Source: Haplodiscus bocki
Taxonomy: Eukaryota
Direction: 5' to 3'
NCBI GenBank assembly: GCA_965655095.1
Contig: OZ296651.1
Span: forward strand, 28,148,001 to 28,212,000
Length of the DNA: 64,000 nucleotides
The first letter of the stretch is position 1. Each line of letters opens with the position of its first letter. Under the pieces are notes generated by a model. That model was not told the DNA's origin, did no database searches, and was given only the letters and a program-made list of their open reading frames with translations. Shown piece after piece: positions 4,307 through 64,000 of this stretch. Both the position numbers and the translations under genes were made by a program.

Positions 4307-5035
4307 TGGGGAATCAAGTGCGAGGGATAGCATGCGGAACAATTTTAGCAAGCTCACCAATTGTCTCCCCAAAACAGTACCCATTGTACTTGATAAATGC
4401 CAGAAACACACGTGACTTTAGTGACAACCTGCGCGCGTCCCAATTGTGAAAAAGAAGGTGAAACGTTTTGCATATTATACAAGTTTTTATAAATCTCCGT
4501 TCAATTGTATTTTTTTCGTTTCTAGAATTTAATCTCATTTTCTCTGCAGTTATTGTTTACTGTTATAATCATTGAATAAAAGGAGAGTCAATCGACTGGG
4601 CAATTTGGCTGTGGTACGATTCTCGAATTCTCTACAAAGTTTTTGTACCTCCACAAAACATACGGCTGAATGAATGATTGAAATGAGAATGTAAATTATA
4701 TTTGTTGTCCGTAGGAACGTTCAAGTTATTGTTTTTACAGCGCACGTTTGAAAAAGCGGAAACAAAGTGGCATTTTGACCTGTTATTTTCCTATTGTGAA
4801 ATCGTTTCTGAACTCCGATTTCCTTGAAATATTTTACTTTTGAGGTCAGTTTTGAACGCATGAATTGATTTTTCTCTTCTTTGTGAGACCACTTCAGTAA
4901 TAAAAAATTATACAATAGTCTGAAAGTCCAAAAATGGTGATTGATTGGATGTTCCGGTTCTGCCGTTCTGTAAAACTTGAAAGACGATATATGGATACTC
5001 CCGAAAAATGCATAAGTCTCTTCTTACTTTCCGAC

Positions 5036-5644
5036 ATGGAAATGTTTCAACTTGAGCTCAATGTTCTGCCATCCTACTTGGCTGTCAATGACAACCAAAA
5101 GATATTCTTCGACCTTAGCCAAACTTTAACCCCCGAAATGTGTTCCACAGGATTCGTTTCACTCTTCAAATTTCAAGGCACTCCAAACACATGTTTCTCA
5201 AGCGCTTTCAGCTCTTATCCCAAGACTTTGAAACGACCTGCAGACTCTTCGCCTGTTCGGAAACGGCCGGCCAAAAGGATACAAGCAAGCCCATTGACCC
5301 AAGACGTCCCTTGTGAGTCTAGCAGCTTTGTTGACCCTTCAAAGGATGGATCCGTTCCTGGAGTAACATCTGGACTTCAATTACCAAGTCAGAAACTTTC
5401 TGATCTGTTTGGAGAATGCGTGGCCGGAGGGGAGAAGTTCTTAATGTGTCTCAATTGTAGCTATAAATCAAAAGATAGAGGCAACATGACGAGACATGTT
5501 CAAAATCAACACGGAATTGCTCGTTCATATGTCTGTTCAACTTGTGGGAAGTCCTTCAGAGAACGCAACAGGCTCAAAGTTCATTACATCAAAGAGCATA
5601 AACTGGCTGAACCTATTGCGAAAGCAGCAGCCACTATGTCATGA
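5036..5644 (+). CDS. C2H2 zinc-finger gene 2
   Basis: ORF 4934-5644; the Met at 5036 (MEMFQLELNV) aligns with paralogue starts. Fingers CLNC..H..H and CSTC..H..H; C-terminal EPIAKAAA. Confidence 0.85.
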   Translation: MEMFQLELNVLPSYLAVNDNQKIFFDLSQTLTPEMCSTGFVSLFKFQGTPNTCFSSAFSSYPKTLKRPADSSPVRKRPAKRIQASPLTQDVPCESSSFVDPSKDGSVPGVTSGLQLPSQKLSDLFGECVAGGEKFLMCLNCSYKSKDRGNMTRHVQNQHGIARSYVCSTCGKSFRERNRLKVHYIKEHKLAEPIAKAAATMS

Positions 5645-9754: not shown

Positions 9755-10390
9755 ATGGAGTTGTATGACATTCATCTCAATTTTTCTGAAGATTTTCTGA
9801 TCTCTCAGTTCAACGAGTTTGGCTATAGCGCTATGCTGCACATTATCAATCCAATTGGCCTTGAAATTTTTTCTGTGCCGGAAACTGTGGGCTCAATTCT
9901 GATCAATCCTTCTTTTCAAAATGAGCCAATTTTCAAAATCACATCAACGTTTAATGAAGTTACATGTCATGCGAAGAAATCTTCGAACGAGCTGTTACAT
10001 CATACCCAGTCGAGAAGACGAGCCGCGCCTAGCCCTGTAAGTGTTCCAAGCAATCAGAAAAGGTCCTTGTTGAGCACAAAACCCTTTACACCAGCCAGTA
10101 GATATTTGGTTTCTGGAGATAGTCGGTCGGTTTTGGAAGAGATGTTTTCTGAAAGCATTTTTCGGGGCGAAAAGTTGTTCATGTGCATGGTATGCAGCTA
10201 CAAGAGCAAGCAAAAAGGCTCCATGCTGAGACATGTGCAATGTGTTCATTCAGACAACCCGCCTTCGTTTCGATGTACAATGTGTGGCACCTGCTTCAAA
10301 GAACGCGGCAACCTGAAAAGTCACTATAAAGGCAAACACAAAATGGAAGACAGTATCGCAAAAGCCGCCGCCAACTTAGCTACGGGATGA
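9755..10390 (+). CDS. C2H2 zinc-finger gene 3
   Basis: MELYDIHLNFSEDFL start; CMVC..H..H and CTMC..H..H fingers; EDSIAKAAA tail. Confidence 0.88.
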   Translation: MELYDIHLNFSEDFLISQFNEFGYSAMLHIINPIGLEIFSVPETVGSILINPSFQNEPIFKITSTFNEVTCHAKKSSNELLHHTQSRRRAAPSPVSVPSNQKRSLLSTKPFTPASRYLVSGDSRSVLEEMFSESIFRGEKLFMCMVCSYKSKQKGSMLRHVQCVHSDNPPSFRCTMCGTCFKERGNLKSHYKGKHKMEDSIAKAAANLATG

Positions 10391-15202: not shown

Positions 15203-15907
15203 ATGACTGATTCCAACTCTACAGATTCTTCTCGTGGATTTTTTGAAGTCGATGTTAGCATTTTAGAATGTTTCTTCTACTATTACAACTCCGATATTGG
15301 CAACTCCATGTTTTTTCCCATAACAAGCCCATTCGAAATCGGTTCAGAATCGATATCGGCCTATCCGGAGAAAGTTGGTTTTTTCACTCTAACAAAGTTG
15401 AACTCTGACGACCGATGTTCCACTCCAAACATTTCAGGCCCTAGCCAATCATCTATTGATTCCAAAAAGAGATCTCTCTATGAGGAACGCAGCAGCGATA
15501 CCCTTAAAAGTAAAGATAAGAAGATAAAGGTTTCTGCAAGAAATTCAAGAAATGTTGTTTCTAAGCGGCTTGTTGGTGAGCCTCAGAAAGAATATAATCC
15601 TCCTCAGTTGAATTTCAGTCCTGAGAGGGTCAGAAGTGGTCGCAAACCAAAAGAGACTGTAAAAGAATTGAAAATAGAAGGCAAACAGTATTTCAAATGC
15701 ATGAAGTGTCGTTACAAAGGGAGACGGAAGTCCTGTATATCAAGACACGTGACCTGTAAACATCCTGTTCCCCCACTTTCTTACAAATGCGTGACTTGTT
15801 ACAAGTCTTGCTCTTCCCGTAAAAATCTCATGATGCACTATGTCAATGTACATCATGTGAAAGAGGCTGTTGCTAAAGCCAGTGCTAATTTGGCTAAAAG
15901 TCGATGA
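15203..15907 (+). CDS. C2H2 zinc-finger gene 4
   Basis: FFEVDVSILECFF motif; CMKC..H..H and CVTC..H..H fingers; EAVAKASA tail. Confidence 0.85.
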   Translation: MTDSNSTDSSRGFFEVDVSILECFFYYYNSDIGNSMFFPITSPFEIGSESISAYPEKVGFFTLTKLNSDDRCSTPNISGPSQSSIDSKKRSLYEERSSDTLKSKDKKIKVSARNSRNVVSKRLVGEPQKEYNPPQLNFSPERVRSGRKPKETVKELKIEGKQYFKCMKCRYKGRRKSCISRHVTCKHPVPPLSYKCVTCYKSCSSRKNLMMHYVNVHHVKEAVAKASANLAKSR

Positions 15908-22823: not shown

Positions 22824-23426
22824 ATGGAATTCTTTGACGTAACAATAATGTTATCTGAGAACTTTCTTGGAAAAGTCAACTGCTGGAAACCAACTCATTT
22901 CCCTCTCAAAAATCACAGCTGGACTTCTATTGGATCAGGTGAAGAGGTCGGCTCCATGATGTTGAAATCATCGACTGAGTCCCACCCATTGCATTTGGAC
23001 TTGCCGATAATTCCCCCCTCAAAAAGGTCCAGTAATTTTTCTTTTGATCCCATTGAGCATAAGAAAAAACGAGCTTCATCAAACCGGCCGAATCTTCATA
23101 ATCTTACACCTGTTTCAAGACCGGGGAATTCATTTTCTGGTACTGCGAAACCTAGCCTGGATACTTCGGACATGTTTGCAGAATGTATCCTCGCTGGTGA
23201 AAAAATTTTCGTGTGTGGTGTTTGCAATTATAAGACTAAAATCAGACCGAACATGCGGAAGCATGTGGAGTGCATGCATTCAGATAACCCGCCATGTTTT
23301 CGATGCTCGACATGTGGAAGTTCTTTCAAAGAAAAAAGTAAACTGAAAGGTCATTATATGAAGACACATAATTTGGAAGAACCCGTAGCGAAAGCTGCTG
23401 CAGCAATAGCCGTGAGCAATAGATGA
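22824..23426 (+). CDS. C2H2 zinc-finger gene 5
   Basis: MEFFDVTIMLSENFL start; CGVC and CSTC fingers; EPVAKAAA tail. Confidence 0.88.
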   Translation: MEFFDVTIMLSENFLGKVNCWKPTHFPLKNHSWTSIGSGEEVGSMMLKSSTESHPLHLDLPIIPPSKRSSNFSFDPIEHKKKRASSNRPNLHNLTPVSRPGNSFSGTAKPSLDTSDMFAECILAGEKIFVCGVCNYKTKIRPNMRKHVECMHSDNPPCFRCSTCGSSFKEKSKLKGHYMKTHNLEEPVAKAAAAIAVSNR

Positions 23427-25380: not shown

Positions 25381-26107
25381 CTTGTTGCGATATTGAATAA
25401 TACTTCATTTTACCAGCGTCATGTTAATTTCCGCGTAATATTTCCAACATTTCTTATTTGGAAGGAACTTCATTCGTTCATAATTCAGGTTTTTTCTCAC
25501 ATCAGATTTCCCAATTGCACGAGGAATTTAAAGTGCACACAAAAAGTTTTTATGTCACCATTTTTTTCCAAATTTCGCATGGAATGCATCTAGCGTAGTG
25601 GTTTTTCTCAAAAATAGTTTTTGTTGCGAAAATTTATGTTTTTTTTTTTGCGAAAGAGATTTAAAAAAAACGATTTTCGATGCAATTTGGCACATTTTTG
25701 GACACTTTTTAGTTCGAATTACGGCATTTTAATGTTTCTTCCGTAATGTGGAAGACGGAAAGTATCCTGGAGTTAACCGGGCGTCTTGTTCAATTTTCAA
25801 ACAATGACGGAATCAAATCCTAAAAGTGACGTTAAAATTCCGCTGTTTGAAAATGAACTTGAAGTTAAGCAACCTGTTGTAGAAAGTGACAATTGAAAGC
25901 GGTTTCTGAGCAAACAAGGTAACAGCTTTTCACAGTGAACGTTGGCAGATTTACAGATTTCGTAATAATGGTTGCAAAATTCTCTTTGGGTCGGGCTGAG
26001 CCCGAAAAAAATAGCGACTGTGTTGCAAAGTCGACTAGTTGGGCTAAATTTTTCCTGTGAAATGAACTATTTGTCTTTCTTCCTGTCAAGTCTTCAGAAC
26101 AGTGTGT

Positions 26108-26710
26108 ATGGACTTTTGTGACGTAACAATCAACTTGACTGAGTTTTTTTTGCGAAGTGTGTTCTACTTGAAAGACATGTATTTCCCTCTAAAAATCGAC
26201 AATTGGACCTCTGATTATCGCAGCTTCTCCGAACAAGTGGGTACCGTGGTGATAAAATCGTCTGTCGACTACCCAACCCAGTTCACTTTTCCCAAAAGTG
26301 CTCCATCAAAGAGGACACATAGCGCCACCCATCCATCGATTGAACCAAAAAGGGGCCGAATTTCATCCAATCGGGTAGTTCCTCATAATCCTGTAACTGC
26401 TGCAAGACCTGGGAGTTCATCTGGTATTAAGAAACCTATCCTAGATGTTTCCGACATGTTTGCAGAATGTATCCTCGCTGGTGAGAAGGTTTTTGTGTGT
26501 GGGGTTTGTAACTATAAAAGTAACGTCAAGCATAACATGCGGAAGCATGTGGAGTGCATGCATTCAGATAACCCGCCATGTTTTCGATGCTCGACATGTG
26601 GAACTTCTTTCAGGGAAAAAAATAAACTGAAAGGTCATTATATGAAGACGCATAATTTGGAAGAACCCGTAGCGAAAGCAGCTGCAGCAATGGCCGTGAG
26701 CAATAGATGA
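26108..26710 (+). CDS. C2H2 zinc-finger gene 6 (closest paralogue of gene 5)
   Basis: ATG at 26108 (MDFCDVTINLTEFFL); 3' half nearly identical to gene 5. Confidence 0.88.
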   Translation: MDFCDVTINLTEFFLRSVFYLKDMYFPLKIDNWTSDYRSFSEQVGTVVIKSSVDYPTQFTFPKSAPSKRTHSATHPSIEPKRGRISSNRVVPHNPVTAARPGSSSGIKKPILDVSDMFAECILAGEKVFVCGVCNYKSNVKHNMRKHVECMHSDNPPCFRCSTCGTSFREKNKLKGHYMKTHNLEEPVAKAAAAMAVSNR

Positions 26711-30213: not shown

Positions 30214-30941
30214 AACCAGACGGCCAGCTAGCACCGGCATATGTTTCGCCCGAACACAAATTTTTTGATCAACATTTGCAAACAGTTAAAAGCGAGACTA
30301 CTGTTTAAAGTCTAGTTTTCGAAGGTTTTCTACAAACATCAATTCCACCAATGAATTCTATATTTTATGAGAAAGAGCTTTCATGTATCAAGTGGGATAT
30401 CACTTTGCGTCTCATAGGGTTTGTCTCGCAGGATCGAAAACCTAGCTAACGGGTCCCTTCTGTTTCACAAAATTTCTGGTATCGAAAAATTATATGGATA
30501 AGTGGGGGGAGGGGGGACGGAGGGAAGGAGTATCACGACTCTCCGTCGAATTTTTTTTGTCTCACAGTGCCGAATAATTTCGTGGAGGAACCCCTCTGTG
30601 CTATGTTTCATTAATTTCGGGTATCGAAAAAGTTGATGGATAAGAGGGAGGGGAGAGTCAATATTTACCGTCGAAAAGTTTTTTTCTCACAGTGCCGAAA
30701 ATTTTCGTAGGGGAACACTTTAGTGTTTCACTATTTTCGGTTATCGAAAATTGTTAGGGATAAATCGTGCAAATGTTTGGCATGGCAGTGACTCGAACCC
30801 TGAACCTACTGCTTGAAAACCATGTTTTCCTAACTCTACTGACATTTTTTTGTTTAAAAATTCGGCAATTTCGCTCTGAAAAAAAACGACCCTACTGAAT
30901 GAATAAGCTTTCTTGCATAATACATGTGCGCTGAAAAATAA
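30214..30941 (-). mobile_element. Helentron/DINE-1-like repeat inserted in the old Polinton
   Basis: Same end (AGACGGCCAGCTAGCACCGGCATAT), internal tctcacagtgccgaa repeats and tRNA-like GACTCGAACC segment as the other copies. Confidence 0.6.
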
Positions 30942-46869: not shown

Positions 46870-48312
46870 TTAAATTAGATCGTTGTTACCGTCATATGCT
46901 GGAGGATCCGGAGAGATTGAATCCGACTGTGACGGGGTTTCTGAAGACGGAGTTTGCTTGGGTTGAAGCACATTGCCAGCTGCTGAAATAGATCTCCTTC
47001 CCCAACGGTTTTCCACAAAAATTTCTGACCCAATGTATGAAGCGAAGGGATACGCCACTTCTCCATGTTCCTGCTTGTCCAAACCAAGTTCTTCAACTCT
47101 AGCCGGTACTCTCAAGAGTCCAGCAAAATGAAGTCCAAAAAACATGGGGCCTGTGGTTATAATAACCCACCCTGTGATAACCAGTGCTCCGAAGATGTTC
47201 CAAAACAGTTGTTTGAACGAGTGGGCATCCCATTCATAAAGAACGCCTGCATCTTTTGCAAACAAACAAACGGCAATTACACCCCAAAGGCCACCCCCAT
47301 AATGAACAGCAAAAGCGTCCAGAGGATCATCGATGCCCAGCTTGAAAATACCTTCGCTGTACCCCCAGAAAACAATGCCGCCAACAACACCCACAAATGC
47401 AGCAGCCCATGGATCCACAGCATCGCAACCGGCGCATATGGAAACCATACCAGTAAGGAACCCGTTTATACACCCCAAGAGGGTAAATTTTTTGGTGGGA
47501 ACATAATAAATTAAAACCACCGTAAGACCTCCACAGGATCCCGAAATCATTGTGTTGACCAGAATTTTTCCAATAACAGCCCCGTCACCTGGCTGAGTAA
47601 TGGACGCTTGGGAGCCTCCGTTGAAAGCAAAGAATCCAAAAATGAGAATGAAGGCCCCGAGGCACATGAGGGGAACTGTATGTCCAAAAACCCGCACATG
47701 CTTTCCATCAACTACTTGATCCAAACGGGGTTTCAGAGCCAGGGTTCCAAGAAGTCCAGCCACACCGCCCACCATGTGAACAACTCCACTGCCAGCAAAA
47801 TCTTTGTAGGAAATTTCCTCCCACCAGCAATCGTTCGCAAGCCATCCTTTTTCATTCCACGTCCAATGAACTACTATCGGGTAAACAAACCCAGTTAAAA
47901 CAAAACTGTAGACGAAATAAGCAGTGAACCGAGTTCGCTCAGCCATGGCTCCCGAGACGATAGTTGCAGCTGTTGCCGCGAAAACAAAGTGGAAAAAGTA
48001 GTGAGGATACAAATTGGACGGAAGGTTAATAAGGAAGAAATTTTTGTATCCCAGGAAGAAGTTTGAGTCCTCTCCAAAAGCCCAAGCGTACCCACAAACC
48101 CAGAAAATGATAGCTGCGATAGCTGAATCCATCAAATTTTTCATCAAGATGTTGGTCGTATTTTTAGCTCTCACCGCTCCAGCCTCCAAAAATGCGAACC
48201 CAGCTTGCATGAAGAAAACAATCATGGAAATTACTATCAGAAAAAAGTTGTCGATATTTTCTCTCAAATAGTCCCATTCCTCTCTCGATACGCTGGATTG
48301 AATGGCAGCCAT
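46870..48312 (-). CDS. amt: Ammonium transporter (Amt family), intronless coding region, ~480 aa
   Basis: FFMQAGFAFLEAGAVRAKN, DFAGSGVVHMVGG, FNGGS, IDDPLDAFAVH motifs; both pore His residues present; first ATG at 48312. Confidence 0.95.
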   Translation of the reverse strand: MAAIQSSVSREEWDYLRENIDNFFLIVISMIVFFMQAGFAFLEAGAVRAKNTTNILMKNLMDSAIAAIIFWVCGYAWAFGEDSNFFLGYKNFFLINLPSNLYPHYFFHFVFAATAATIVSGAMAERTRFTAYFVYSFVLTGFVYPIVVHWTWNEKGWLANDCWWEEISYKDFAGSGVVHMVGGVAGLLGTLALKPRLDQVVDGKHVRVFGHTVPLMCLGAFILIFGFFAFNGGSQASITQPGDGAVIGKILVNTMISGSCGGLTVVLIYYVPTKKFTLLGCINGFLTGMVSICAGCDAVDPWAAAFVGVVGGIVFWGYSEGIFKLGIDDPLDAFAVHYGGGLWGVIAVCLFAKDAGVLYEWDAHSFKQLFWNIFGALVITGWVIITTGPMFFGLHFAGLLRVPARVEELGLDKQEHGEVAYPFASYIGSEIFVENRWGRRSISAAGNVLQPKQTPSSETPSQSDSISPDPPAYDGNNDLI

Positions 48313-48530: not shown

Positions 48531-49440
48531 AACAAGACGGCCAGCTAGCACCGGCATATTTTTCGCCCAACTACAAATATTTTGATCAACTTTGCAAACG
48601 GTCAAAAACAAAACAAAACAAAACTGTTTTGATTTTAGTTTTCAAAGAGTTCTTACAAACATCAATTCGACCACTGATTTCTGTACTTTCTGCAAAAGGG
48701 TATCACGATTTTCCGTTGAAAAATTTTTGTCTCACAGTGCCGAAAAATTTCGTCGAGGGACCCTTCTGTGTTTCAGAAAATTTCTGGTACCGAAAAATGT
48801 TAGGGATAAGAGAGGGGGCGAGTATCACGATTTTCTGTCAAAATTGTTTTGTCTGACAGTGCCGAAAAACTTCGTAGGGGAACCCTTCTGTGCTTCACAA
48901 AAGTTCCAGTATCGAAAAAATTTATGGATATGAGGGGGGGAGGAGGAAGGGAGTATCACAATTTTCTGTCGAAAATTTTTTGTCTCACAGTGCCGAAAAA
49001 TTTGTAGGTGAACCCTTTAGTGTGTCATTAATTTCGGGTATCGAAAAATGTTATGCTTCAGAGGGTTATGTCACGATTGTTCGTCGAATTTTTTTGTCTC
49101 GCAGTACCGAAAAACTTTGCAGGGGAACCCTTCTGTGCTGTGTTTCGGAAAGTTTCCGGTAGCGAAAAGGTTTATGGATGAGAAGGGGGGAGTATCAAAA
49201 TTTTGCGGCGAAAAATTTTTATCTCACAGTGCCGGAAAATTTGCAGGGGAACCCTTTAGGGTGTCACTGATTTCGGGTATCGAAAAATTTTATGCTTCAG
49301 AGGGTTATGTCACGATTTTCCATCGAAATTTTTTTGTCCCACAGTACCGAAACATTTCATAGAGGAACTCTTCTATGCTGTATTTCAGAAAATTTCTGAT
49401 AGCGAAAAAGTTTATAGATAAGAGGGAGGGGGAAGTATCA
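48531..49440 (-). mobile_element. Helentron/DINE-1-like repeat with internal tandem array, interrupted by the viral insertion
   Basis: Minus-strand 3' end GCCGGTGCTAGCTGGC hairpin + CGTCTTGTT; ~120-bp units (tctcacagtgccgaaaaa..ggaaccc..gtatcgaaaaa..gggagtatca) break abruptly at 49440. Confidence 0.65.
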
Positions 49441-49448
49441 ATAATATA

Positions 49449-49820
49449 GGGTATTCCCTTTAATACCAGTAGCTCCTCATCGACCTCATTCGCTTCGCTC
49501 ATTTGATCGATTCGTCACACTGGTATTAAACGGAATACCCACGCTCGCTCGTCACTTCGTTCCTCACCGGCTCATTCGCTTCGCTCATTCACCTCTCGCT
49601 TATATTATTGCTCGGCTATGCCTCGCCTTTCTCGCTTCGCTCGTGTACTTATACGATCATGATAATTATAAGTGTTTATATGATTACAATCTGGCCAAGC
49701 AAAGATATACGTTATTATCATCGCTCGTCACTTCGTTCCTCACCGGCTCTGTTCGCTTCGCTCACTATCGCCTATCGCTTATATTATTGCTCGCCTATGG
49801 CTCGCCTTGCTTCGCTCGTG
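49449..49820. repeat. Terminal hairpin (49449-49540) and two ~100-bp direct repeats rich in GCTTCGC
   Basis: Arms GGGTATTCCCTTTAATACCAGT / ACTGGTATTAAACGGAATACCC (21/22 complementary); repeats at ~49545-49645 and ~49721-49820. Confidence 0.9.
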
Positions 49821-50162
49821 GGAATTCGTGAAAGTATACAATTATGTTGAATTAGAAATAAAATTGAAATTATTCGATTTCTTTTTATTCGATAGAATTC
49901 TTTCATGATATCTTGCGTTTCTCTCTCCTCGTAATACAAACTTTTTAGATTTGTCGTTATTTTTTAAAATATAGATACTTACAATTATATTTGTAATTAT
50001 ACTAGAGATATTTACAATTATATGAGTACTTATACGATCACGATAATTAGGTGATGTACAATTATACGAGTATAGATACTAGAGTATACATACAATTATA
50101 AGTGTTTATATTTTGTCTAGTTTTTTTCGAAGTGTTCTTTTGATTTTACAACCATTTATAAG

Positions 50163-52906: not shown

Positions 52907-53584
52907 ATGGAGAAGTTTCTTTATCCAACTCATCCCGTTAGGTGTATTATAACGGGACCAAGCAACGTGGGTAAATCAGTATTTTTAACAAATTTAATTT
53001 TAAATATTATAAACGAATATGATAAAATATACATCTATTCACCAAGTCTTCATCAAGAGTTATATCAAAAATTAAATAAATGTTTTAGTAATCATATACC
53101 AATTCATATAATACCAAATATTTTAAACGAAGAAGATATTGATATAGTTATTGAAGAAGTAATTAATAATAAAGACTTTCAAAAATCAGATGTCGAATTA
53201 GAAACATTTGATAATATAGAAAATTTAAAATTTCCTCAAGAATATGAAAATAATAGTATCATTATCCTAGATGATTTAAATCAAAAAGAGATGGATGATC
53301 CTAGAGTTCAAGCTATGTTTAAAAGATCTAGACATAATAATTTATCTATTTTTATAATAAGTCAAGATTACTATGAATTAAGTAAAAAAACAATACGATG
53401 TAATGGTAATATCTATCATATATTTAAACCAAACAATTTCAGAGATGTGATTAATCTTTATCAAGATAAAGCATCTATGGATATGAATCTTAATGAATTT
53501 AAATTATTAACTAGTATTTGTTGGAATGAAAAATATAAACCTCTTACAATTGATATGGCAAAAGATAAATATACAGGTCGTTAA
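52907..53584 (+). CDS. A32-like DNA packaging ATPase (stop likely slightly premature)
   Basis: Walker A GPSNVGKS, Walker B IIILDD, RSRHNNLS; the frame reads on to ~53632 after the TAA. Confidence 0.92.
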   Translation: MEKFLYPTHPVRCIITGPSNVGKSVFLTNLILNIINEYDKIYIYSPSLHQELYQKLNKCFSNHIPIHIIPNILNEEDIDIVIEEVINNKDFQKSDVELETFDNIENLKFPQEYENNSIIILDDLNQKEMDDPRVQAMFKRSRHNNLSIFIISQDYYELSKKTIRCNGNIYHIFKPNNFRDVINLYQDKASMDMNLNEFKLLTSICWNEKYKPLTIDMAKDKYTGR

Positions 53585-53674
53585 AGGCTTGGATTAAGTT
53601 CAATATTTGTTCCTGATACGACCCCTTTTTAAAATATATTTACACATATACAAGTGTTTATTTGAGTATTATAA

Positions 53675-54564
53675 ATGAGTATTTATTCAAATGTTACTGA
53701 AAAAGTTTTAGATAATCTTCGTAAACTAGCACAACAACAGAAAGAGGAAAGAGCTGTCAAAATTAAAAATAGAATTTTGAAACAAACACATGACGTTTAA
53801 TTAGCAGAAAGCTTATCACCTATTACTAAAGAATTAAAAAAGTCTACCAAAAAAATAAGCGAAGTTATCAAAGAATCAAATTCTGAAAATGAAAATAATC
53901 AAGAGATAGTTCCTGTTGATATTGAATCAGAAGATGAAAATGTTCAAACTAATTTAAGAGCCCTTCCAAACAGTTCTATGTTCAGTGATCAAATGACAAA
54001 AACATTAGGTAGATTAATGTCTAGCGCTAATTCTCTAAAAATAAAATCTACTCCTTTTGGCGCAACAATTCTTGGAGTTCCAATTTACACATTAGGTGGA
54101 GATACAATACAAATAAAAGATAATGTTTATGATTTAACTCCTGAAATATATAAAGCCGTATCTTATACAGGATATGATGGTAAAACTATGAAAAACGAAA
54201 ACGATATCTTAATGCTTAATAATATTATCAGAGATTTAGGATACACAGGTCGTGGAGATTATCAATCAAAAGGAAAAACATTTCTCACAGAAAAACTTCC
54301 AAATTAGTTGAAGAAATTCAAAACAGAACTTTCGAAGAAATTACAGACGACTCTAATGATTTACAAGGAGAAGGAGTTAAAATAACTATTCCCAACAATA
54401 TAATCGACATCTATACCAGACTTGAAATTTTACTAGGATTAAAACTATCAGGACATACTGATACTCTCACAGAAGCAAGCAATTTAATAGATGAATTATA
54501 CAAACTAGGTGAAATACGAAATAAACAGCATTATCGAAATGCTCTTAACAAATTTTCTAACTAA
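53675..54564 (+). pseudogene. Conserved Polinton virion-core-type ORF, disrupted
   Basis: MSIYSNVT... stop at 53798, frameshift ~54300; C-terminus LQGEG..IYTRLEILLGLKLSGH....EA..LIDEL...GEI. Confidence 0.65.
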
Positions 54565-54832
54565 TATTATTACAATAATAAAATTTTTATAATAATATAA
54601 TTTTCATACATGTATAAGAATAATTATATTCGAATACGTGTTATTATACCTTATTGAATAATTATAATTGGAAATACAAGTGTAATAATTTCATTTGAAC
54701 AAATGTAGTTATACAATATTATTTATTATAAATACCTAAGTATATTTACAATTATTCAAGTAGTTTTACGAGTATTTATATGAGTACGTATACTAGAGTA
54801 TACTTACAAATATAAGTATTTATTACTCATAA

Positions 54833-55618
54833 ATGGAACTTCCTAGTAAATTATTAGAACAGATTGTTTATAATGCTAGACCTAACATAGAAGAGCATAT
54901 TCTAATCATTATGGATAAAAGTAATCATAAAGAGCATTTATCTCAACCACTTCAAACAAATAATAAACAATTTAAAATTGCAGTCACTTTTCTAACCGCA
55001 TATAATGGAATTTTCAATATTACAAGTAAAAATAATAATTTTTATTTCTCAAAATCAATCATCGATGATAATCATTTTCAGTCCATTACTATTCCACAAG
55101 GTAGTTATGAAATAGAAAGTTTAAATGACGAGATTAAAAGGATTATTATTGATGAAGGTTATTTTACTCTCGAAGAATATCCGTTTTCAATCAAGCCTAA
55201 TTTTTCGACTCTTGGATCTATTATAGAAATCTCCAATGAAGAGTCTGCTATATCATTCAAACCAGATGACAGTATAAGAGATCTCTTAGGATTTAATAAG
55301 ACTACAATATATGAAAAATATAATTTATCACCTAATCCCGTTGATATAATTTCGTTTGATAATATTTTCATTGAAACTAATATTGCTCAAGGAATGATCT
55401 TTAAACAACAGAGGACTGGTATAATACACAATTTCACTATGACCGTTAACCCAGGATACAAATATGTGGAACGCTTTGAAGGGGGAATTAGTTGGTATAT
55501 GCTTCAGACTAATGATTTTATTTCAAGTATTAATTTTAAATTTAAAAATGAAAACAATGAATTAGTATCATTTAATGGACAATCAGTGACTTTTAAATTA
55601 TCTATCAAGGAAGTTTAG
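54833..55618 (+). CDS. Minor capsid protein (penton, single jelly-roll)
   Basis: YN.IFNIT..NN.F, IPQGSYEIESLN, PGYK..E, I..I......N...V.FNG. Confidence 0.85.
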   Translation: MELPSKLLEQIVYNARPNIEEHILIIMDKSNHKEHLSQPLQTNNKQFKIAVTFLTAYNGIFNITSKNNNFYFSKSIIDDNHFQSITIPQGSYEIESLNDEIKRIIIDEGYFTLEEYPFSIKPNFSTLGSIIEISNEESAISFKPDDSIRDLLGFNKTTIYEKYNLSPNPVDIISFDNIFIETNIAQGMIFKQQRTGIIHNFTMTVNPGYKYVERFEGGISWYMLQTNDFISSINFKFKNENNELVSFNGQSVTFKLSIKEV

Positions 55619-55781
55619 GACATGGATACTTACAATTATATGAGTATTTATACCAGCGTATACTTACAATTATATGGGTATTTATACATACTTCTAAAAA
55701 TATTTCTGTGTTTGTACACTTATGTTTGTATTTATACTAGAGGTATACTTACAATTATTTGAGTATTTTACTTCTTTTCAA

Positions 55782-56003: not shown

Positions 56004-57313
56004 ATGAGTGCTAACGACTTTCAATTGATAGATGACGAAAAAATTGATGATTCAATCATAAAACGAGATTTCATAAAAATTTACCATCAATCTGGAGCTA
56101 ACGTAGATGCTGAAAATTCACAAATTAAATTCTATTTCGGTGAAAATCATAATTTTATTCAAGTAGGTAATGGCTATCTGGAATTTGATATAAGAATTAG
56201 AAGAGATGATGGTAATGCTTTCAGAGTCCCTGTCAATGTTGGAGATCCGAATGATATAATTAGATTAGTTAATAACGCATTTGCTTATACAATTCATGGT
56301 GCTAGAATATCAACATCAGCAGGAGTAGAAATTGAACAAAACAAATATGTTGGCCCTATTTCAACCATTATGAGATTAGTAACAGAAAAAGATGGGGATT
56401 TATCTACATATTTTGATATAATTAATGAAAAAGAGAATGGTATCAAAGATTCAACATTAAAACAAATACTCATCAACAATCACACTGAAGCTAATAGGGG
56501 TCTTATAAGAGGTCATCTACATTTGGAATATATATTTGGATTTGCAAGATCGTTTAAGAAAACAACAAAAGGACTCGGCTTCGAATTAGATTTACGAACA
56601 TCAAATAGAAAACGAGATATTCTGTACACGACATTAGACGATGATGATGTTAATGTTACTATTAACTGCATAAGTTTGTTTATTCCTCAATTAATACCAT
56701 CACCTGAAACACAAGTAATCTCCCACGAAGCAATTTCACATACTTTCACTTTATCATATGAATCTTGGACTACAGATAGAAAACCTGTTGATACAGCAAG
56801 AGAATTTCAACTAGATATATCATCAGCATCAAATATAAATAGTCCGTTATATCTTATAGCAGCACATCAGAAAACACAACGAGCCGATCCTGCTAACCCG
56901 GCTAAAAATCTATTCAACAACAGATTCAATAATGCTATTTTCGATCATGTTAACGTACGAAAATATTATTCAGAAATAGATGGTATTCGATACCCAAAAA
57001 ATCCTGTCATGGTTAATTATGAGGAAAACAATTATCTTGAACAATACCAAGCTTTAAAACTATTTTACAAAGAATATGTAGGTGATCAATTATTACCTCC
57101 TATTATAACATATGATAAGATGAAAGACTTTTATCCCATTCAAATAATCGACCTACGGTTCCAAGTAGACCACATATCACCAAAAAGATAAGATTGTTTG
57201 AAGAATACGATCCCAATCCAACTAATACTAATTTATATGTAATATTAATAAAACATAGAGAGATTAAAATGATTTCCGATGGTAATAAAATTATTAGTGT
57301 TGAAGTAGTGTAA
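56004..57313 (+). CDS. Major capsid protein (double jelly-roll), one frameshift at ~57187
   Basis: DDSI, YLEF, LVNNAFAY..EIE, FDH.NV....IDG.RYP, PI..IDL..Q; the C-terminus continues in another frame (IRLFEEY...ISVEVV). Confidence 0.88.
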
Positions 57314-57340
57314 AAAAAATATAAATTAAAAAATGATACT

Positions 57341-57682
57341 ATGAACGAATCTCAATTACAAAAAATTTATAATTATACTATATACCCCAGAGATTCAAAA
57401 ATATATTCAGATAAAGGATTTGTTAAAATAGACAACGGATCTCAAGGAGGATCTCATTGGACTTGTTTTATAGTGAAAGATAAAAAATCATACTATTTTG
57501 ATAGTTTCGGAGTTCAACCAGATAGATTTTTAATAAATCAATTACCTAAACCAATAATGTCTCATAATTATAAAATACAAGATAGAAATTCAAAATTATG
57601 TGGCTCATGTTGTTTATATTTTTTCTATTTAATTGAACGAATGAATTTTTATGATGCAATATTAAAAATGCATTTTGGTTAA
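57341..57682 (+). CDS. Adenain-like cysteine maturation protease
   Basis: GSHW, YFDSFG, IQ....LCG..C catalytic His/Asp/Gln/Cys pattern. Confidence 0.9.
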   Translation: MNESQLQKIYNYTIYPRDSKIYSDKGFVKIDNGSQGGSHWTCFIVKDKKSYYFDSFGVQPDRFLINQLPKPIMSHNYKIQDRNSKLCGSCCLYFFYLIERMNFYDAILKMHFG

Positions 57683-57688
57683 TTAAAT

Positions 57689-59017
57689 ATGCCGATAAAT
57701 GTATTTGGAAACTCTTCAAATAATTCTGAACAAAAAATTGATACTTCAATATTTGTACAAAAACCCTACTTAAGAACTAATTATATAGAAGCTAATATAG
57801 AAGAAGATATTGACTTAAAAAATCAATTTAGAATTAAAAATTTACCTGATCCCATAAGCATTAGAGAGCCAGCTCCAAAACATTACGTTAATATTTTATT
57901 CAACGATCCTAGTATAGTAAAAAACACTGAACATATAGATCTAAATGATAGAAATAATACTAATGCTAGATTTATACAAGTCAATCAATGGCCGCAGATC
58001 GATTCGCATCTAACACCTAGGTTGTATGTTGATAATGCCGTAGATGAATCATCATTAGTTAGAAATAATCAAGATAATGATTTTAATAATAATAACTTAA
58101 CGAATATAAATAGTATTACTTTAAATAAACAAGCAGAAAATGATAATGAAGTAATAACAAAAGCTTATGTAGATCAATTTCATCAAGAGAATGAACGATC
58201 TCGACGAGATTTAGGTATTAATTTTTATAATGAATCAAATGATTTGGTCAGGAATAATCAAGACAATGATCTCAATGATAAAAAAATAACAAATTTAGAT
58301 TCTATCACAGTTAATAGAAATGCTAGTTTAGATAATGAATTAGCAAACAAAAAAATATATCGATGACTCAATAGCGGAAGGTACATTGCTTAGATTTAAT
58401 CAAACATTAACAAATTATCTCAAAGTATCTGTTGGAAATGATACGTATAATTTAACTAAATATGATGAAATTCAATTGACTGATACAACAGTTATGAAAG
58501 CTAGAAACAATGGAGGTTATCTCCTACCATACTGGAGGATTGTATGTAATGATAAAAAGAACAATGGAAAAAAAACAAATTTTATAAAATCAACAAAAAC
58601 GAATTCTCCAACCGGATCATCAGGAGCAACGACTTTACCACCTGTAGGTACTGCATTCAAGTATATAGAAACAAGCTCAAATAATAATGGAAATAATGTT
58701 TTTGTTAGCTTGGCAAGAACTGATATCATTCAAATTACCAAAATAACATTCTAGTATAATAGATTTTCAATATCTGAAAATAATTTACGAGCTATGGGTC
58801 GGTTTAGAATTTAACTATTATTAGAAGATAACACCTGGTCAACGAGGTATAATATACCTATAATGATCAATATAGTGATTCATCAACTGATTGGACTCTT
58901 ATAAATTTAAATTTCACTGTAGAAAATTATGGTATTAAATTAATTTATGATGAGATAGACACAGCTCATGCTGATATGTGTTTTAGTAATATTACGATCA
59001 CACATTCTGTATATTGA
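57689..59017 (+). pseudogene. Fibre/spike-like protein with shaft repeats and a C-terminal MAM-like domain, disrupted
   Basis: Repeats I.NL..P....A.K.YV(D); frameshifts at ~58350 and ~58860, stops at 58752 and ~58812. Confidence 0.65.
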
Positions 59018-60866: not shown

Positions 60867-61427
60867 ATGGAAGGCATGAAGAGATGTTCGAATTGTGATA
60901 ATGAAAAAGAATTATCTCAATTCAAATTTAGAAAAGATACACAGAGATATAGAAGTGAATGTATACAGTGTTCTAATATTAAACATAAAGAATGGAGAAT
61001 TATTAATCCTGACAAAGTAAAACAAATTCAGAAAAAATATAATGAACAAAACAGAGAAAAAAGAAATATATATCTTAAAAACAAACGAGAAACAGATGTT
61101 AATTTTCGTTTAATCAACAATACTAGAAACAGAATTTATAAATCTTTAAAAAGTATGACAAAACAATCATCAACGAAAGAAATTTTAGGAATTGATATTG
61201 AGACATATAAAAAGTGGCTTGAATTTCAGTTCACACCTGAGATGAATTGGTCAAATATTGAGATCGATCACGTCAAACCTATATGTATGTTTGATGTATC
61301 CAAAGATGAAGATTTAAAAGAAGCATTCAATTGGAAAAATACCCAGCCTTTATTAAAAGAAGTACATTCTCATAAAGGTATTAAATTTAATTTCTTAGAT
61401 TATCAGATTATCAACTTCAATTTATAA
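60867..61427 (+). CDS. HNH (EndoVII-like) endonuclease with N-terminal zinc knuckle
   Basis: CSNC..C..C; M.W.N..IDHVKP...FD......AFNWKNTQPL; C-terminus altered by an 8-bp duplication. Confidence 0.8.
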   Translation: MEGMKRCSNCDNEKELSQFKFRKDTQRYRSECIQCSNIKHKEWRIINPDKVKQIQKKYNEQNREKRNIYLKNKRETDVNFRLINNTRNRIYKSLKSMTKQSSTKEILGIDIETYKKWLEFQFTPEMNWSNIEIDHVKPICMFDVSKDEDLKEAFNWKNTQPLLKEVHSHKGIKFNFLDYQIINFNL

Positions 61428-61451: not shown

Positions 61452-62306
61452 ATGAGGAGAGATTTAACGAAAATATTCATTGATGAAATATATTCCAAAC
61501 CACCTCGAAAAAATTATCCAACCAATAAAATAGTATATAATCACATTGATGAAATCTGTTCAATTGATTTAGCTGATATGATAGACTACAAAATTTCAAA
61601 TAATAAAGGATTTAGATATATATTCATCGTGATTGATAATTTCAGTAAATATTTATGGGGTATACCACTTAAAAATAAATATAGTCAAACTATCACAAAC
61701 GAATTTTCGAACATTCTGACTAAGTCAAAACGAAAGCCTATCAAATTAGAATCGGACCGAGGATCTGAATTTTATAATAGTATTTTTCAGAACTTCTTAA
61801 AATTAAAAAATATACATCACTATTCACGTTTTACTGATAAAGGACCTAGTATAGCAGAACGTGTTATTAGAACCATACGTACTTTTTTAAAGAAGCCAGT
61901 GTTTGAGAAAGGAAATGCTGATTGGGTAAGTGAACTAACATCTGTTATTAAAAAGTACAATAATACCATTCATCATTCAACTAAAATGACTCCCATTCAA
62001 GCTTCAAAAAAATCCAACGAAAAAATAGTATATAACAATCTCGAAGACAATAGAGAAGTTCGAAAACCAAAATTTAAGTTAGGACAACTAGTCCGTACTG
62101 CAGATAATAAAAGAGTATTCTCGAAAGGAGACAGTACAAATTACAGTTATAAATTATATACAATAACTGAAATCATACACAATACTATACCTCCATATAG
62201 AATCAACTATTTACCCGAGAGATATAATGAAAATTTATTATTACCTACCAAATTAACCCTTGTAGAAAACAACCAAGTTATGAAAGAATTGAATTTAATT
62301 CAATAA
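61452..62306 (+). CDS. Retroviral-type (rve, DDE) integrase
   Basis: IDLADM, IDNFSKY, SDRGSEF, AERVIRT, YNNT.H..TKMTP, KFKLGQLVR. Confidence 0.93.
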   Translation: MRRDLTKIFIDEIYSKPPRKNYPTNKIVYNHIDEICSIDLADMIDYKISNNKGFRYIFIVIDNFSKYLWGIPLKNKYSQTITNEFSNILTKSKRKPIKLESDRGSEFYNSIFQNFLKLKNIHHYSRFTDKGPSIAERVIRTIRTFLKKPVFEKGNADWVSELTSVIKKYNNTIHHSTKMTPIQASKKSNEKIVYNNLEDNREVRKPKFKLGQLVRTADNKRVFSKGDSTNYSYKLYTITEIIHNTIPPYRINYLPERYNENLLLPTKLTLVENNQVMKELNLIQ

Positions 62307-63897: not shown

Positions 63898-64000
63898 ATG
63901 GAGATGATAATTAATAACGAGACTAAAAAATTATCACGAAATAGAAAAAGAAGAATGGATCGTAAAAATAAAATTAATAATGATATGAAATTATTATTAA
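63898..64000 (+). CDS. Viral ORF, truncated by the window end
   Basis: TATAAATG start, MEMIINNETKKLSRNRKRR... open to the end. Confidence 0.5.
   Translation, partial: MEMIINNETKKLSRNRKRRMDRKNKINNDMKLLL

What the first reader, a model, noticed from the sequence alone, without database searches (positions are those of the whole stretch)
49441..49820. Viral terminus is a hairpin plus arrays of GCGAAGC mini-hairpins rather than a canonical AG- Polinton end
Seen: the element starts ATAATATAGGG. A 22-bp stem (49449-49470 / 49519-49540) encloses a 48-nt loop, followed by two ~100-bp direct repeats. GCTTCGC occurs five times (~49492, 49578, 49634, 49755, 49809), always in the same orientation, so the minus strand reads GAGCGAAGC(GA), plus GAGGAACGAAGTGAC twice. 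Established: d(GCGAAGC) is an exceptionally stable ssDNA mini-hairpin closed by a sheared G-A pair; such folds occur in ssDNA phage origins and parvovirus termini. Inference: a strand-specific ssDNA origin/telomere structure, implying self-primed or strand-displacement replication in an integrase-bearing capsid element.
Basis: partly seen in the sequence, partly recalled or inferred. Interest (0 to 1): 0.8.

Follow-up and report, generated by a model that had tools for sequence, protein, structure and literature searches.

The report
Hairpin-bearing terminal repeat of a Maverick
The flagged 380 bases are the outer part of the left terminal inverted repeat of an 18.3-kb, partly decayed Maverick/Polinton virus-like element integrated in an invertebrate (acoel-like) genome. 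Its near-terminal hairpin is real and kept by compensatory changes, but the element is otherwise an ordinary integrase-inserted, polymerase-encoding Maverick and the "mini-hairpin array" idea is not established.

Summary
The 22-bp inverted repeat (49449-49470 / 49519-49540), the two ~100-bp direct repeats and five same-strand GCTTCGC are all present and non-random.

The region is the outer ~386 bp of a 524-bp terminal inverted repeat (TIR). The inverted copy lies 18.3 kb downstream on the same contig, and both ends are flanked by a 6-bp target-site duplication (AGTATC). The element (window 49440 to the equivalent of 67744) encodes an A32-type ATPase, a double-jelly-roll capsid protein, an rve integrase and a protein-primed polymerase (pPolB). 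Several of these genes are broken. It is a Maverick/Polinton.

The tip is an A/T-only 9-mer with a trinucleotide reiteration, as protein-primed origins require.

The hairpin is the best local inverted repeat in the element (z about -6.7). In one sister copy it keeps pairing through 4-5 two-sided changes. Three other sister copies carry a different pPolB and a non-homologous ~300-nt terminal foldback. Outer TIR and polymerase therefore swap together as an end module.

GCTTCGC is part of TCGC-rich iterated repeats. It is degenerate in relatives and absent from the other end type.

Self-primed replication is not supported for this copy, because a 9-nt tail stays unpaired and no flip/flop is seen. 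It is not excluded for the family.

Verdict: new variant of a known kind, moderately interesting.

The parts
48700..49439 (.). Host 122/239-bp tandem repeat into which the element inserted. It resumes on the far side of the element.
   Evidence: Tandem repeat finder. Both flanks align to an uninterrupted unit.
49434..49439 (.). Left copy of the 6-bp target-site duplication AGTATC. The right copy is L002 14749-14754, equivalent to window 67745-67750 and outside the window.
   Evidence: Read directly. The uninterrupted host unit carries the hexamer once.
49440..49963 (+). Left terminal inverted repeat. The inverted copy is L002 14225-14748 (524 bp, 94.7% identical).
   Evidence: There are 8 mismatches in the outer 387 nt and 20 in the inner 137 nt.
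49440..49825 (+). Outer TIR, the 'end module' that co-varies with the pPolB type.
   Evidence: Shared with L004 (type A). Replaced by non-homologous sequence in L003, L005 and L006 (type B).
49440..49448 (+). Tip: an A/T-only 9-mer with the trinucleotide reiteration AAT-AAT. The type-B tip has AGT-AGT.
   Evidence: Terminal reiteration is what sliding-back or jumping-back in protein-primed initiation requires (PMC5175343).
49449..49470 (+). Hairpin arm 1.
49471..49518 (+). 48-nt spacer or loop of the hairpin. It contains one GCTTCGC, which is mutated in the right-end copy.
49519..49540 (+). Hairpin arm 2.
49545..49645 (+). Direct repeat unit 1. It is pyrimidine-rich (73% C+T on this strand), TCGC-rich, and holds two GCTTCGC.
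49646..49720 (+). AT-rich spacer between the units. It contains a shortened copy of the internal AT-rich repeat found at 50026-50111.
   Evidence: Families D7 and D8.
49721..49820 (+). Direct repeat unit 2, with two GCTTCGC. The sister copy L004 has only one such unit.
49600..49609 (-). Inverted tip-like 10-mer (one mismatch to the tip) inside unit 1. A second copy is at 49779-49788. This is weak evidence, because such AT-rich 10-mers are common in the element.
49826..49873 (+). Inner block conserved in both end types. It marks the inner border of the swapped end module.
   Evidence: Alignment of six termini.
49963..50111 (+). AT-rich ~33-nt repeats that recur in intergenic regions 54701-54823 and 55614-55768. 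They look like promoter elements; this was not tested.
52907..53629 (+). A32-type packaging ATPase gene, broken by one in-frame stop.
   Evidence: Pfam Pox_A32 E = 5.6e-11. Break count.
53675..54558 (+). Homologue of a 285-aa ORF of the relatives, broken by one frameshift and one stop.
54833..55618 (+). Conserved 261-aa ORF upstream of the capsid gene. It is intact and is a minor-capsid candidate by position only.
   Evidence: 75-81% identical in four relatives. No family hit.
56004..57310 (+). Double-jelly-roll major capsid protein gene, broken by one frameshift.
   Evidence: Pfam DJR-like_dom E = 5.1e-13. 623 relatives. Break count.
57287..57682 (+). Homologue of a 133-135-aa ORF of the relatives, broken by one stop. 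It is a protease candidate by position only.
   Evidence: No family hit.
57689..58508 (+). Homologue of a 275-aa ORF of the relatives, broken by one frameshift.
60867..61427 (+). His-Me / endonuclease VII-like nuclease ORF, only 31-35% identical to its positional counterpart in the relatives.
   Evidence: PHROG endonuclease VII E = 2.5e-11.
61452..62306 (+). rve (retroviral-type) integrase, intact.
   Evidence: Pfam rve E = 8.8e-12.
63904..64000 (+). Start of the pPolB gene region. It continues beyond the window to about the equivalent of window 67100 and lies in at least three ORF pieces.
   Evidence: Gene calls of the same contig. Pfam DNA_pol_B_2 E = 1.4e-10 on the last piece. 88-93% identical to L004.

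Best explanation
The region is the outer, homogenised part of the left TIR of an 18.3-kb Maverick/Polinton integrated by its rve integrase into a host satellite repeat. It is most likely the cis-acting end module of a protein-primed linear replicon. Shown: TIR, 6-bp target-site duplication, gene content, and a tip with a trinucleotide reiteration. Shown: a near-terminal palindrome whose complementarity is kept by two-sided changes. Shown: co-variation of the outer TIR with the pPolB type while the capsid and integrase genes stay 69-91% identical. Inferred: the pPolB (with a terminal-protein function) starts at the A/T-only reiterated tip and recovers the end by jumping back. Inferred: synthesis displaces the 5'-ended strand. 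Inferred: the palindrome 9 nt from the end forms a hairpin or cruciform that serves the cognate polymerase as an origin-auxiliary element, for example by easing opening of the tip or marking the end on single strands. Inferred: the TCGC-rich ~100-bp repeats act as iterated protein-binding sites. On this reading the GCTTCGC heptamers are a by-product of adjacent TCGC(T) units and not a required mini-hairpin.
For: Right-end inverted copy, 524 bp at 94.7%. Target-site duplication AGTATC and a matching uninterrupted host unit. ATPase, capsid and integrase; pPolB. Hairpin z = -6.6 and -6.8, while the remaining TIR has z about 0. It is the best local inverted repeat of the element. Of 22 pairs, 4 changed on both sides (a fifth through a one-base bulge shift), none changed on one side only while staying paired, 93.9% of cells paired against 31-45% when partners are slid. 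Type-B relatives have non-homologous terminal foldbacks with z = -5.9 and -22.7. Type A (window, L004) has a Pfam-detectable pPolB, 88-93% identical between the two. Type B (L003, L005, L006) has a 1217-aa pPolB with B-family motifs, 78% identical among them. Across types the polymerases align over only about 70 residues at 32%. The other genes are shared across types. Terminal reiteration is required for sliding-back or jumping-back (PMC5175343). TCGC occurs 17:0 on the two strands.
Against: No functional datum exists for any Maverick origin. Only two independent lineages carry the homologous hairpin, so covariation rests on one comparison. Arm co-evolution could come from copying and not from selection. 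Right ends of the relatives were not read, so their TIRs and duplications are unverified. In nematode Polintons a pPolB displacement left the TIRs conserved (PMC10748475), so polymerase-TIR coupling is not universal. The general mini-hairpin class GCGN(N)AGC is modestly enriched on the 3'-ended strand in both type-A termini: 3 against 0.42 expected (p about 0.004) and 3 against 0.68 (p about 0.02). Nearest-neighbour models cannot score this motif (PMC13037366).
Confidence: 0.6

Rival explanations
1. Hairpin telomere: the terminal palindrome folds on single-stranded or nicked DNA and primes synthesis from its own 3' end (rolling-hairpin type), or the linear form has covalently closed ends that are resolved from palindromic junctions.
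For: In relative L006 the ~320-nt foldback pairs from the very first nucleotide (z = -22.7); in L005 it pairs from nucleotide 4. Terminal palindromes next to target-site duplications have been reported in endogenous virophages and Polinton-like viruses, with a hairpin-priming model (bioRxiv 10.64898/2026.07.28.741278). The stand-alone 18.9-kb contig L003 begins inside the second arm of such a foldback. Endonuclease VII-like domains occur in the element and in the type-B polymerase.
Against: In the window's element the hairpin leaves a 9-nt unpaired tail, which is not an extendable primer. The loop orientation is identical in all three homologous termini. No Rep/HUH nickase or other replicase was found among 20 ORFs. 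Both end types come with a protein-primed polymerase and a reiterated tip. In the preprint the palindromes go mainly with non-pPolB replication genes. A contig ending in a palindrome is also an expected assembly artefact.
Confidence: 0.1
2. The palindromes are tolerated by-products of replication, such as snap-back or template switching by a strand-displacing polymerase. They have no function of their own, and the arms stay complementary because they are re-copied from each other.
For: The palindromes differ completely in sequence, arm length (22 to about 100 nt) and spacer (23 to 114 nt) between lineages. The window TIR also shows a recent internal duplication that L004 lacks. The Halocafeteria preprint itself names accidental annealing as an alternative.
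Against: A palindrome is present at the same place in all termini read, in both end types. Two-sided changes occur within a 22-bp stem too short for ordinary gene conversion. Re-copying between arms would itself require the hairpin to form in vivo.
Confidence: 0.17
3. The GCGAAGC-class mini-hairpins on the 3'-ended strand are themselves the functional units of the type-A origin, for example as sites that exclude single-strand-binding protein or resist nucleases.
For: Five exact copies, all on the 3'-ended strand of each end. The class GCGN(N)AGC is enriched over dinucleotide shuffles in the window and in L004, always on that strand. The motif's exceptional stability and its occurrence at ssDNA origins are documented (PMC13037366).
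Against: The copies lie in direct repeats and are not independent. The underlying TCGC(T) iteration, which dinucleotide shuffles do not preserve, produces the heptamer automatically. One of five copies is mutated in the right TIR. In L004 two aligned sites read GCTTTGC, which fails the motif's third-base G. There are none in type-B ends. The motif was chosen after seeing the data.
Confidence: 0.1
4. The hairpin region is an unrelated small foldback transposon (MITE) nested in the element's end.
For: It has two 22-bp inverted arms around a short spacer, about 92 bp in all, which is a MITE-like shape.
Against: It is present in both TIRs at the same distance from the tip. It is colinear with the flanking tip and inner sequence in L004. 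It has no flanking duplication of its own. No other copy exists in the 64-kb window or in about 40 kb of host flanks of the fetched loci.
Confidence: 0.03

Closest known systems
Polinton/Maverick elements (definition as summarised in PMC10748475: 13-25 kb, TIRs 100-1500 bp, target-site duplications 5-8 bp, pPolB + rve integrase + capsid module)
   Same: 18.3 kb, 524-bp TIR, 6-bp duplication, pPolB, rve integrase, A32-type ATPase, double-jelly-roll capsid protein.
   Different: The tip is AA...TT and not the often-reported AG...CT (that recollection is from memory). A conserved palindrome lies 9 nt from the end, followed by TCGC-rich 100-bp repeats.
Terminal palindromes in TIRs of endogenous virophages and Polinton-like viruses of Halocafeteria seosinensis (bioRxiv 10.64898/2026.07.28.741278)
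   Same: A palindrome inside the TIR, next to the target-site duplication, in rve-integrase-bearing elements.
   Different: There the palindromes go preferentially with non-pPolB replication genes and the host is a protist. Here both end types have a pPolB and the host is an animal. In the window's copy the palindrome does not include the terminal 9 nt.
Protein-primed linear replicons (adenovirus, phi29, PRD1, Bam35; PMC5175343)
   Same: Inverted terminal repeats, a family-B protein-primed polymerase, and a short reiteration at the 3' end of the template that allows sliding-back or jumping-back.
   Different: No terminal protein has been identified and no biochemistry exists. A near-terminal hairpin is not part of those origins as described in that paper.
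pPolB1/pPolB2 displacement in nematode Polintons (PMC10748475)
   Same: Closely related elements carry two very distant pPolB types.
   Different: In nematodes the TIRs stayed conserved across the two polymerase groups. Here the outer TIR changes together with the polymerase.
'End module' hypothesis for Polinton-like viruses (PMC11296320)
   Same: Terminal repeats and the adjacent replication gene behave as one exchangeable unit.
   Different: That work concerns primase-helicase and tyrosine-recombinase modules. Here the module is pPolB plus outer TIR, and the integrase stays with the core.
Mini-hairpin DNA, GCGNAGC / GCGNNAGC (PMC13037366)
   Same: The exact heptamer GCGAAGC occurs five times on one strand of each end.
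   Different: It is not conserved at aligned sites and not present in the sister end type. Formation in this context is untested.
Parvovirus and poxvirus hairpin telomeres (established knowledge; cited as analogy in the Halocafeteria preprint)
   Same: A palindrome at a linear genome end.
   Different: No nickase, no flip/flop, and the 3' tip is unpaired in this copy. The element encodes its own protein-primed polymerase.

Membership tests
Polinton/Maverick | Protein-primed family-B DNA polymerase gene | tested here: met
   Pfam DNA_pol_B_2 E = 1.4e-10 on the last piece, just beyond the window on the same contig. The gene lies in at least three ORF pieces.
Polinton/Maverick | Retroviral-type (rve) integrase | tested here: met
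   Pfam rve E = 8.8e-12. The gene is intact relative to relatives.
Polinton/Maverick | Capsid module: double-jelly-roll major capsid protein and A32/FtsK-type ATPase | tested here: met
   DJR-like_dom E = 5.1e-13; Pox_A32 E = 5.6e-11.
Polinton/Maverick | Adenovirus-type maturation protease | tested here: inconclusive
   A conserved small ORF follows the capsid gene, but it has no Pfam or PHROG hit.
Polinton/Maverick | Terminal inverted repeats of 100-1500 bp | tested here: met
   524 bp at 94.7%; the outer 387 nt have 8 mismatches.
Polinton/Maverick | Target-site duplication of 5-8 bp (typically 6) | tested here: met
   AGTATC on both sides, once in the uninterrupted host unit.
Polinton/Maverick | 5'-AG...CT-3' termini (frequent feature recalled from memory; not part of the definition in PMC10748475) | tested here: not met
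   This element starts AATAAT. Sister type-B copies start AGTAGT.
Protein-primed replication origin | Short reiteration at the genome tip that allows sliding-back or jumping-back | tested here: met
   AAT-AAT at 49440-49445; AGT-AGT in type B (PMC5175343).
Protein-primed replication origin | Terminal protein covalently bound to the 5' ends | not testable with these tools
   Needs physical analysis of extrachromosomal DNA.
Rolling-hairpin (parvovirus-type) telomere | Terminal palindrome that pairs the 3'-terminal nucleotide | tested here: not met
   A 9-nt tail is unpaired in the window and in L004. The feature is met in relative L006 and nearly met in L005.
Rolling-hairpin (parvovirus-type) telomere | Flip/flop inversion of the palindrome among ends or copies | tested here: inconclusive
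   Three homologous termini all have the same orientation. The sample is too small.
Rolling-hairpin (parvovirus-type) telomere | HUH/Rep site-specific nickase | tested here: not met
   No such family among 20 ORFs scanned.
Mini-hairpin DNA | Sequence GCGNAGC or GCGNNAGC | tested here: met
   Five GCGAAGC on the 3'-ended strand.
Mini-hairpin DNA | Motif kept at aligned positions in relatives | tested here: inconclusive
   One aligned site is kept in L004 and two aligned sites there read GCTTTGC. One of five is lost in the right TIR. Other class members appear at non-aligned sites. None occur in type B.
Mini-hairpin DNA | Structure actually forms in this context | not testable with these tools
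   Nearest-neighbour models do not capture it (PMC13037366).
TIR-internal terminal palindromes of virophages and Polinton-like viruses (Halocafeteria preprint) | Palindrome within the TIR adjacent to the target-site duplication | tested here: met
   It starts 9 nt from the duplication here, and 0-3 nt from the end in L005 and L006.

The most novel reading that the evidence does not exclude
In this animal Maverick family the terminal palindromes are working telomeres. On displaced or nicked strands they fold back (in type-B ends right from the first nucleotide) and give hairpin-ended or self-primed intermediates alongside, or instead of, protein priming. The outer TIR and its polymerase would then co-evolve as a telomere-enzyme pair, and mini-hairpin-class motifs would stabilise the type-A fold.
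Probability: 0.12. Interest if true: 0.8.

Novelty: new variant of a known kind. Interest (0 to 1): 0.45.

Why it matters
How Mavericks/Polintons replicate has never been shown, and their origins are unknown. This family offers a natural comparison. Near-identical capsid and integrase cores carry two unrelated end types, each with its own polymerase and its own terminal palindrome. That points to the outer TIR as the polymerase's cis-partner and to intrastrand pairing as a conserved property of the ends. It also extends a very recent observation of palindromes in TIRs of protist virophages and Polinton-like viruses to pPolB-encoding elements of an animal. If a census of copies confirmed this, it would make the question 'what is a Maverick origin?' addressable by comparative sequence analysis alone.

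Tried and rejected
- Rfam scan of the whole window: no family.
- tRNA scan of the right flank: nothing.
- Host identification:
  - Pfam scans of host ORFs gave only C2H2 fingers and the Amt transporter.
  - The cluster look-up gave no names.
  - The assembly accession is in no paper.
  - The word search with the transporter finally pointed to an acoel-like animal.
- My first folding script timed out.
- Folding the whole 381-nt region gave no structure signal beyond the hairpin (z = 0.2 and -0.7). 'Arrays' of ordinary hairpins are therefore rejected. Mini-hairpins cannot be judged this way.
- I tested whether the tip pairs with the inverted tip-like 10-mers in the repeat units. It does not in the minimum-energy fold, and the 10-mer is common in the AT-rich element. 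I gave this little weight.
- I tested whether the nuclease ORF co-varies with end type. It does not.
- The type-B polymerase found no relative of solved structure. It was assigned to family B from motifs visible and a weak match to the window's polymerase.
- A nested MITE was considered and rejected (see rivals).

Full report
**1. What is there**

The sequence at 49440-49826 reads as the finding says.
- A 22-nt inverted repeat lies at 49449-49470 / 49519-49540, 95% complementary, around a 48-nt spacer.
- Two ~100-bp direct repeats lie at 49545-49645 and 49721-49820. They are 87.5% identical and share a 29-nt identical core.
- Five GCTTCGC occur, all on the + strand. The whole window has 10 copies against 2.9 expected.
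- G+C falls from about 39% to about 24% just inside the region and stays low to the window's end.

**2. It is the left terminal inverted repeat of an integrated Maverick/Polinton**

The AT-rich block carries densely packed ORFs.
- A32-type packaging ATPase (Pfam E = 5.6e-11).
- Double-jelly-roll capsid protein (E = 5.1e-13).
- rve integrase (E = 8.8e-12).
- A His-Me / endonuclease VII-like nuclease.

An exact look-up of two of the window's own proteins returned the window's own contig, a 307-kb ENA contig. This extended the view 9.8 kb to the right.
- L002 14225-14748 is the inverted copy of window 49440-49963: 524 bp, 94.7% identical.
- The hexamer AGTATC flanks both ends, at window 49434-49439 and L002 14749-14754.
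- Both flanks align to one uninterrupted unit of a host 122/239-bp satellite that holds the hexamer once.
- The element therefore runs from 49440 to the equivalent of window 67744, 18,305 bp.
- A protein-primed family-B polymerase gene lies just inside the right repeat (Pfam DNA_pol_B_2).
- Size, repeats, duplication and gene set match the published definition of Polintons/Mavericks (PMC10748475).

**3. State of this copy (counts only)**

Compared with uninterrupted relatives:

| Gene | State |
|---|---|
| ATPase | one stop |
| 285-aa ORF homologue | one frameshift and one stop |
| Capsid gene | one frameshift |
| 133-aa ORF homologue | one stop |
| 275-aa ORF homologue | one frameshift |
| Integrase | uninterrupted |
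| 261-aa ORF | uninterrupted |
| Polymerase | at least three ORF pieces |

The two repeats differ at 8 of the outer 387 positions and at 20 of the inner 137. It is an old, decaying insertion.

**4. Host**

The neighbouring intronless ammonium-transporter gene has as its best named relative the acoel Convolutriloba macropyga (64% identity). Hemichordate, echinoderm and cnidarian proteins follow at about 50-55%. The host is therefore an invertebrate animal, probably an acoel or a close relative. From that point I treated the element as a virus-like element of an animal.

**5. The hairpin is real and maintained**

- The 106-nt tip folds at -19.1 (+ strand) and -24.0 (- strand) kcal/mol against -6.5 and -7.6 for shuffles, z = -6.6 and -6.8. 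The full 381 nt give z = 0.2 and -0.7, so nothing else there folds unusually.
- It is the best local inverted repeat of the element.
- One relative, L004, has the same tip and flanks but a hairpin with different arms and a 23-nt spacer.
- On the alignment, 15 of the 22 pairs never vary. Four changed on both sides, and a fifth did so through a one-base bulge shift. None varied on one side only while staying paired. Three show unpaired cells.
- 93.9% of cells pair, against 31-45% when the partners are slid.
- This rests on two independent lineages only.

**6. Two end modules**

Five termini from four other copies in the same assembly fall into two types.

| Feature | Type A (window, L004) | Type B (L003, L005, L006) |
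|---|---|---|
| Tip | AATAATATAG | AGTAGTATAT |
| Palindrome | small hairpin starting 9 nt from the end | non-homologous ~300-nt foldback pairing from nucleotide 1 (L006, z = -22.7) or 4 (L005, z = -5.9) |
| Other repeats | TCGC-rich units | none of that kind |

- The stand-alone contig L003 starts inside the second arm of the type-B foldback.
- Both types join the same conserved inner block, window 49826-49873.
- The polymerase follows the end type. Type-A polymerases are 88-93% identical to each other. Type-B polymerases are 1217 aa, show B-family motifs and an endonuclease VII-like insert, and are about 78% identical to each other.
- Between types only about 70 residues align, at 32%.
- The capsid, ATPase and integrase genes are 69-91% identical across types, and most other shared ORFs fall in a similar range.
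- Outer repeat and polymerase therefore exchange as a unit. This fits the 'end module' idea (PMC11296320). It differs from nematode Polintons, where the repeats stayed the same across two polymerase groups.

**7. The tip**

Both tips are trinucleotide reiterations (AAT-AAT, AGT-AGT) and match at 7 of 9 positions. A short terminal reiteration is what protein-primed systems use to recover the end after internal initiation (PMC5175343). This is sequence-level support for protein priming. It is not proof.

**8. The GCTTCGC motif**

GCGAAGC melts at 76.5 C, the class is GCGNAGC / GCGNNAGC, and standard models cannot predict it (PMC13037366).
- The five copies lie in longer direct repeats. The strand carries TCGC 17 times against 0 on the other strand, so adjacent TCGC(T) units generate the heptamer.
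- One copy is mutated in the right repeat.
- In L004 one aligned site is kept and two aligned sites read GCTTTGC. Two other class members appear elsewhere in L004. Type B has none.
- The class is modestly enriched over dinucleotide shuffles on the 3'-ended strand, p about 0.004 in the window and p about 0.02 in L004. That null does not preserve the tetramer bias, and the motif was chosen after seeing the data.
- Verdict on this point: not established, not excluded.

**9. Mechanism**

My best reading is a protein-primed origin with a structured auxiliary element, specific to its polymerase (confidence 0.6).

Self-priming is unlikely for this copy.
- The 9-nt tip stays unpaired.
- All three homologous loops have the same orientation.
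- No nickase was found.

It stays open for type-B ends, whose palindromes include the last nucleotide. A 2026 preprint proposes hairpin priming for similar palindromes in protist virophages and Polinton-like viruses, mostly ones without pPolB.

**10. Limits and slips**

- I fetched four other copies by look-up before I knew the host was an animal. After I made no further look-up, pattern scan or accession fetch of relatives. The right ends of the relatives and a wider census are therefore missing; see the referred steps.
That joins segments of the region and should not have been done. Its result is used nowhere.
- In my reasoning I briefly recalled from memory short terminal motifs of known viruses.
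- Comparisons across frameshifts printed counts and outer bounds only.

Noticed in passing
window 48700-49439 (also 30463-30663; resumes at L002 14755): A host satellite of 122/239-bp units is the insertion site. The element sits inside one unit.
   Followed up: partly
window 49963-50111, 54701-54823, 55614-55768; shortened copy at 49645-49681: AT-rich ~33-nt repeats recur in intergenic regions upstream of the 261-aa ORF and the capsid gene, and once inside the TIR spacer. They look like shared promoter elements.
   Followed up: partly
window 4934-5644, 9755-10390, 15203-15907, 22824-23426, 26102-26710: Five paralogous small ORFs (200-236 aa) on the + strand of the host part. Four have C-terminal C2H2 zinc-finger hits; 15203-15907 has no family hit.
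   Followed up: no
window 46870-48312 (-): An intronless ammonium-transporter gene lies in a 47% G+C island. Its nearest named relative is from an acoel (64% identity), which identifies the host as an invertebrate animal.
   Followed up: yes
L003 1-160 (contig of 18,948 bp): A stand-alone contig of about element length, at about 20x coverage (host contigs are at 36-75x), begins inside the second arm of the type-B terminal foldback. This is either an assembly break at a palindrome or a hint of a free form.
   Followed up: no
L003 13044-16697; L006 18948-21314: The type-B polymerase carries an Endonuclease_7-like (His-Me finger) insert and escapes the Pfam DNA_pol_B_2 model, although B-family motifs are visible.
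   Followed up: partly
window 60867-61427: The nuclease ORF is only 31-35% identical to its positional counterpart in all four relatives, while the neighbouring genes are 69-90% identical. This looks like a lineage-specific replacement.
   Followed up: partly
window 49827-49963 versus L002 14225-14361: The inner part of the TIR is much more diverged between the two ends (20 of 137) than the outer part (8 of 387). Only the outer part seems to have been kept uniform.
   Followed up: partly
L003 832-1266: A 144-aa ORF of a relative has a precomputed Pfam hit to a poxvirus RNA-polymerase subunit family (PF03293). I did not check it, and I did not look for it in the window's copy.
   Followed up: no
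L005 3794-3832: A type-B end carries three perfect tandem copies of a 13-nt unit inside the first arm of its foldback. This is an iteron-like array analogous in position to the window's TCGC-rich repeats.
   Followed up: no
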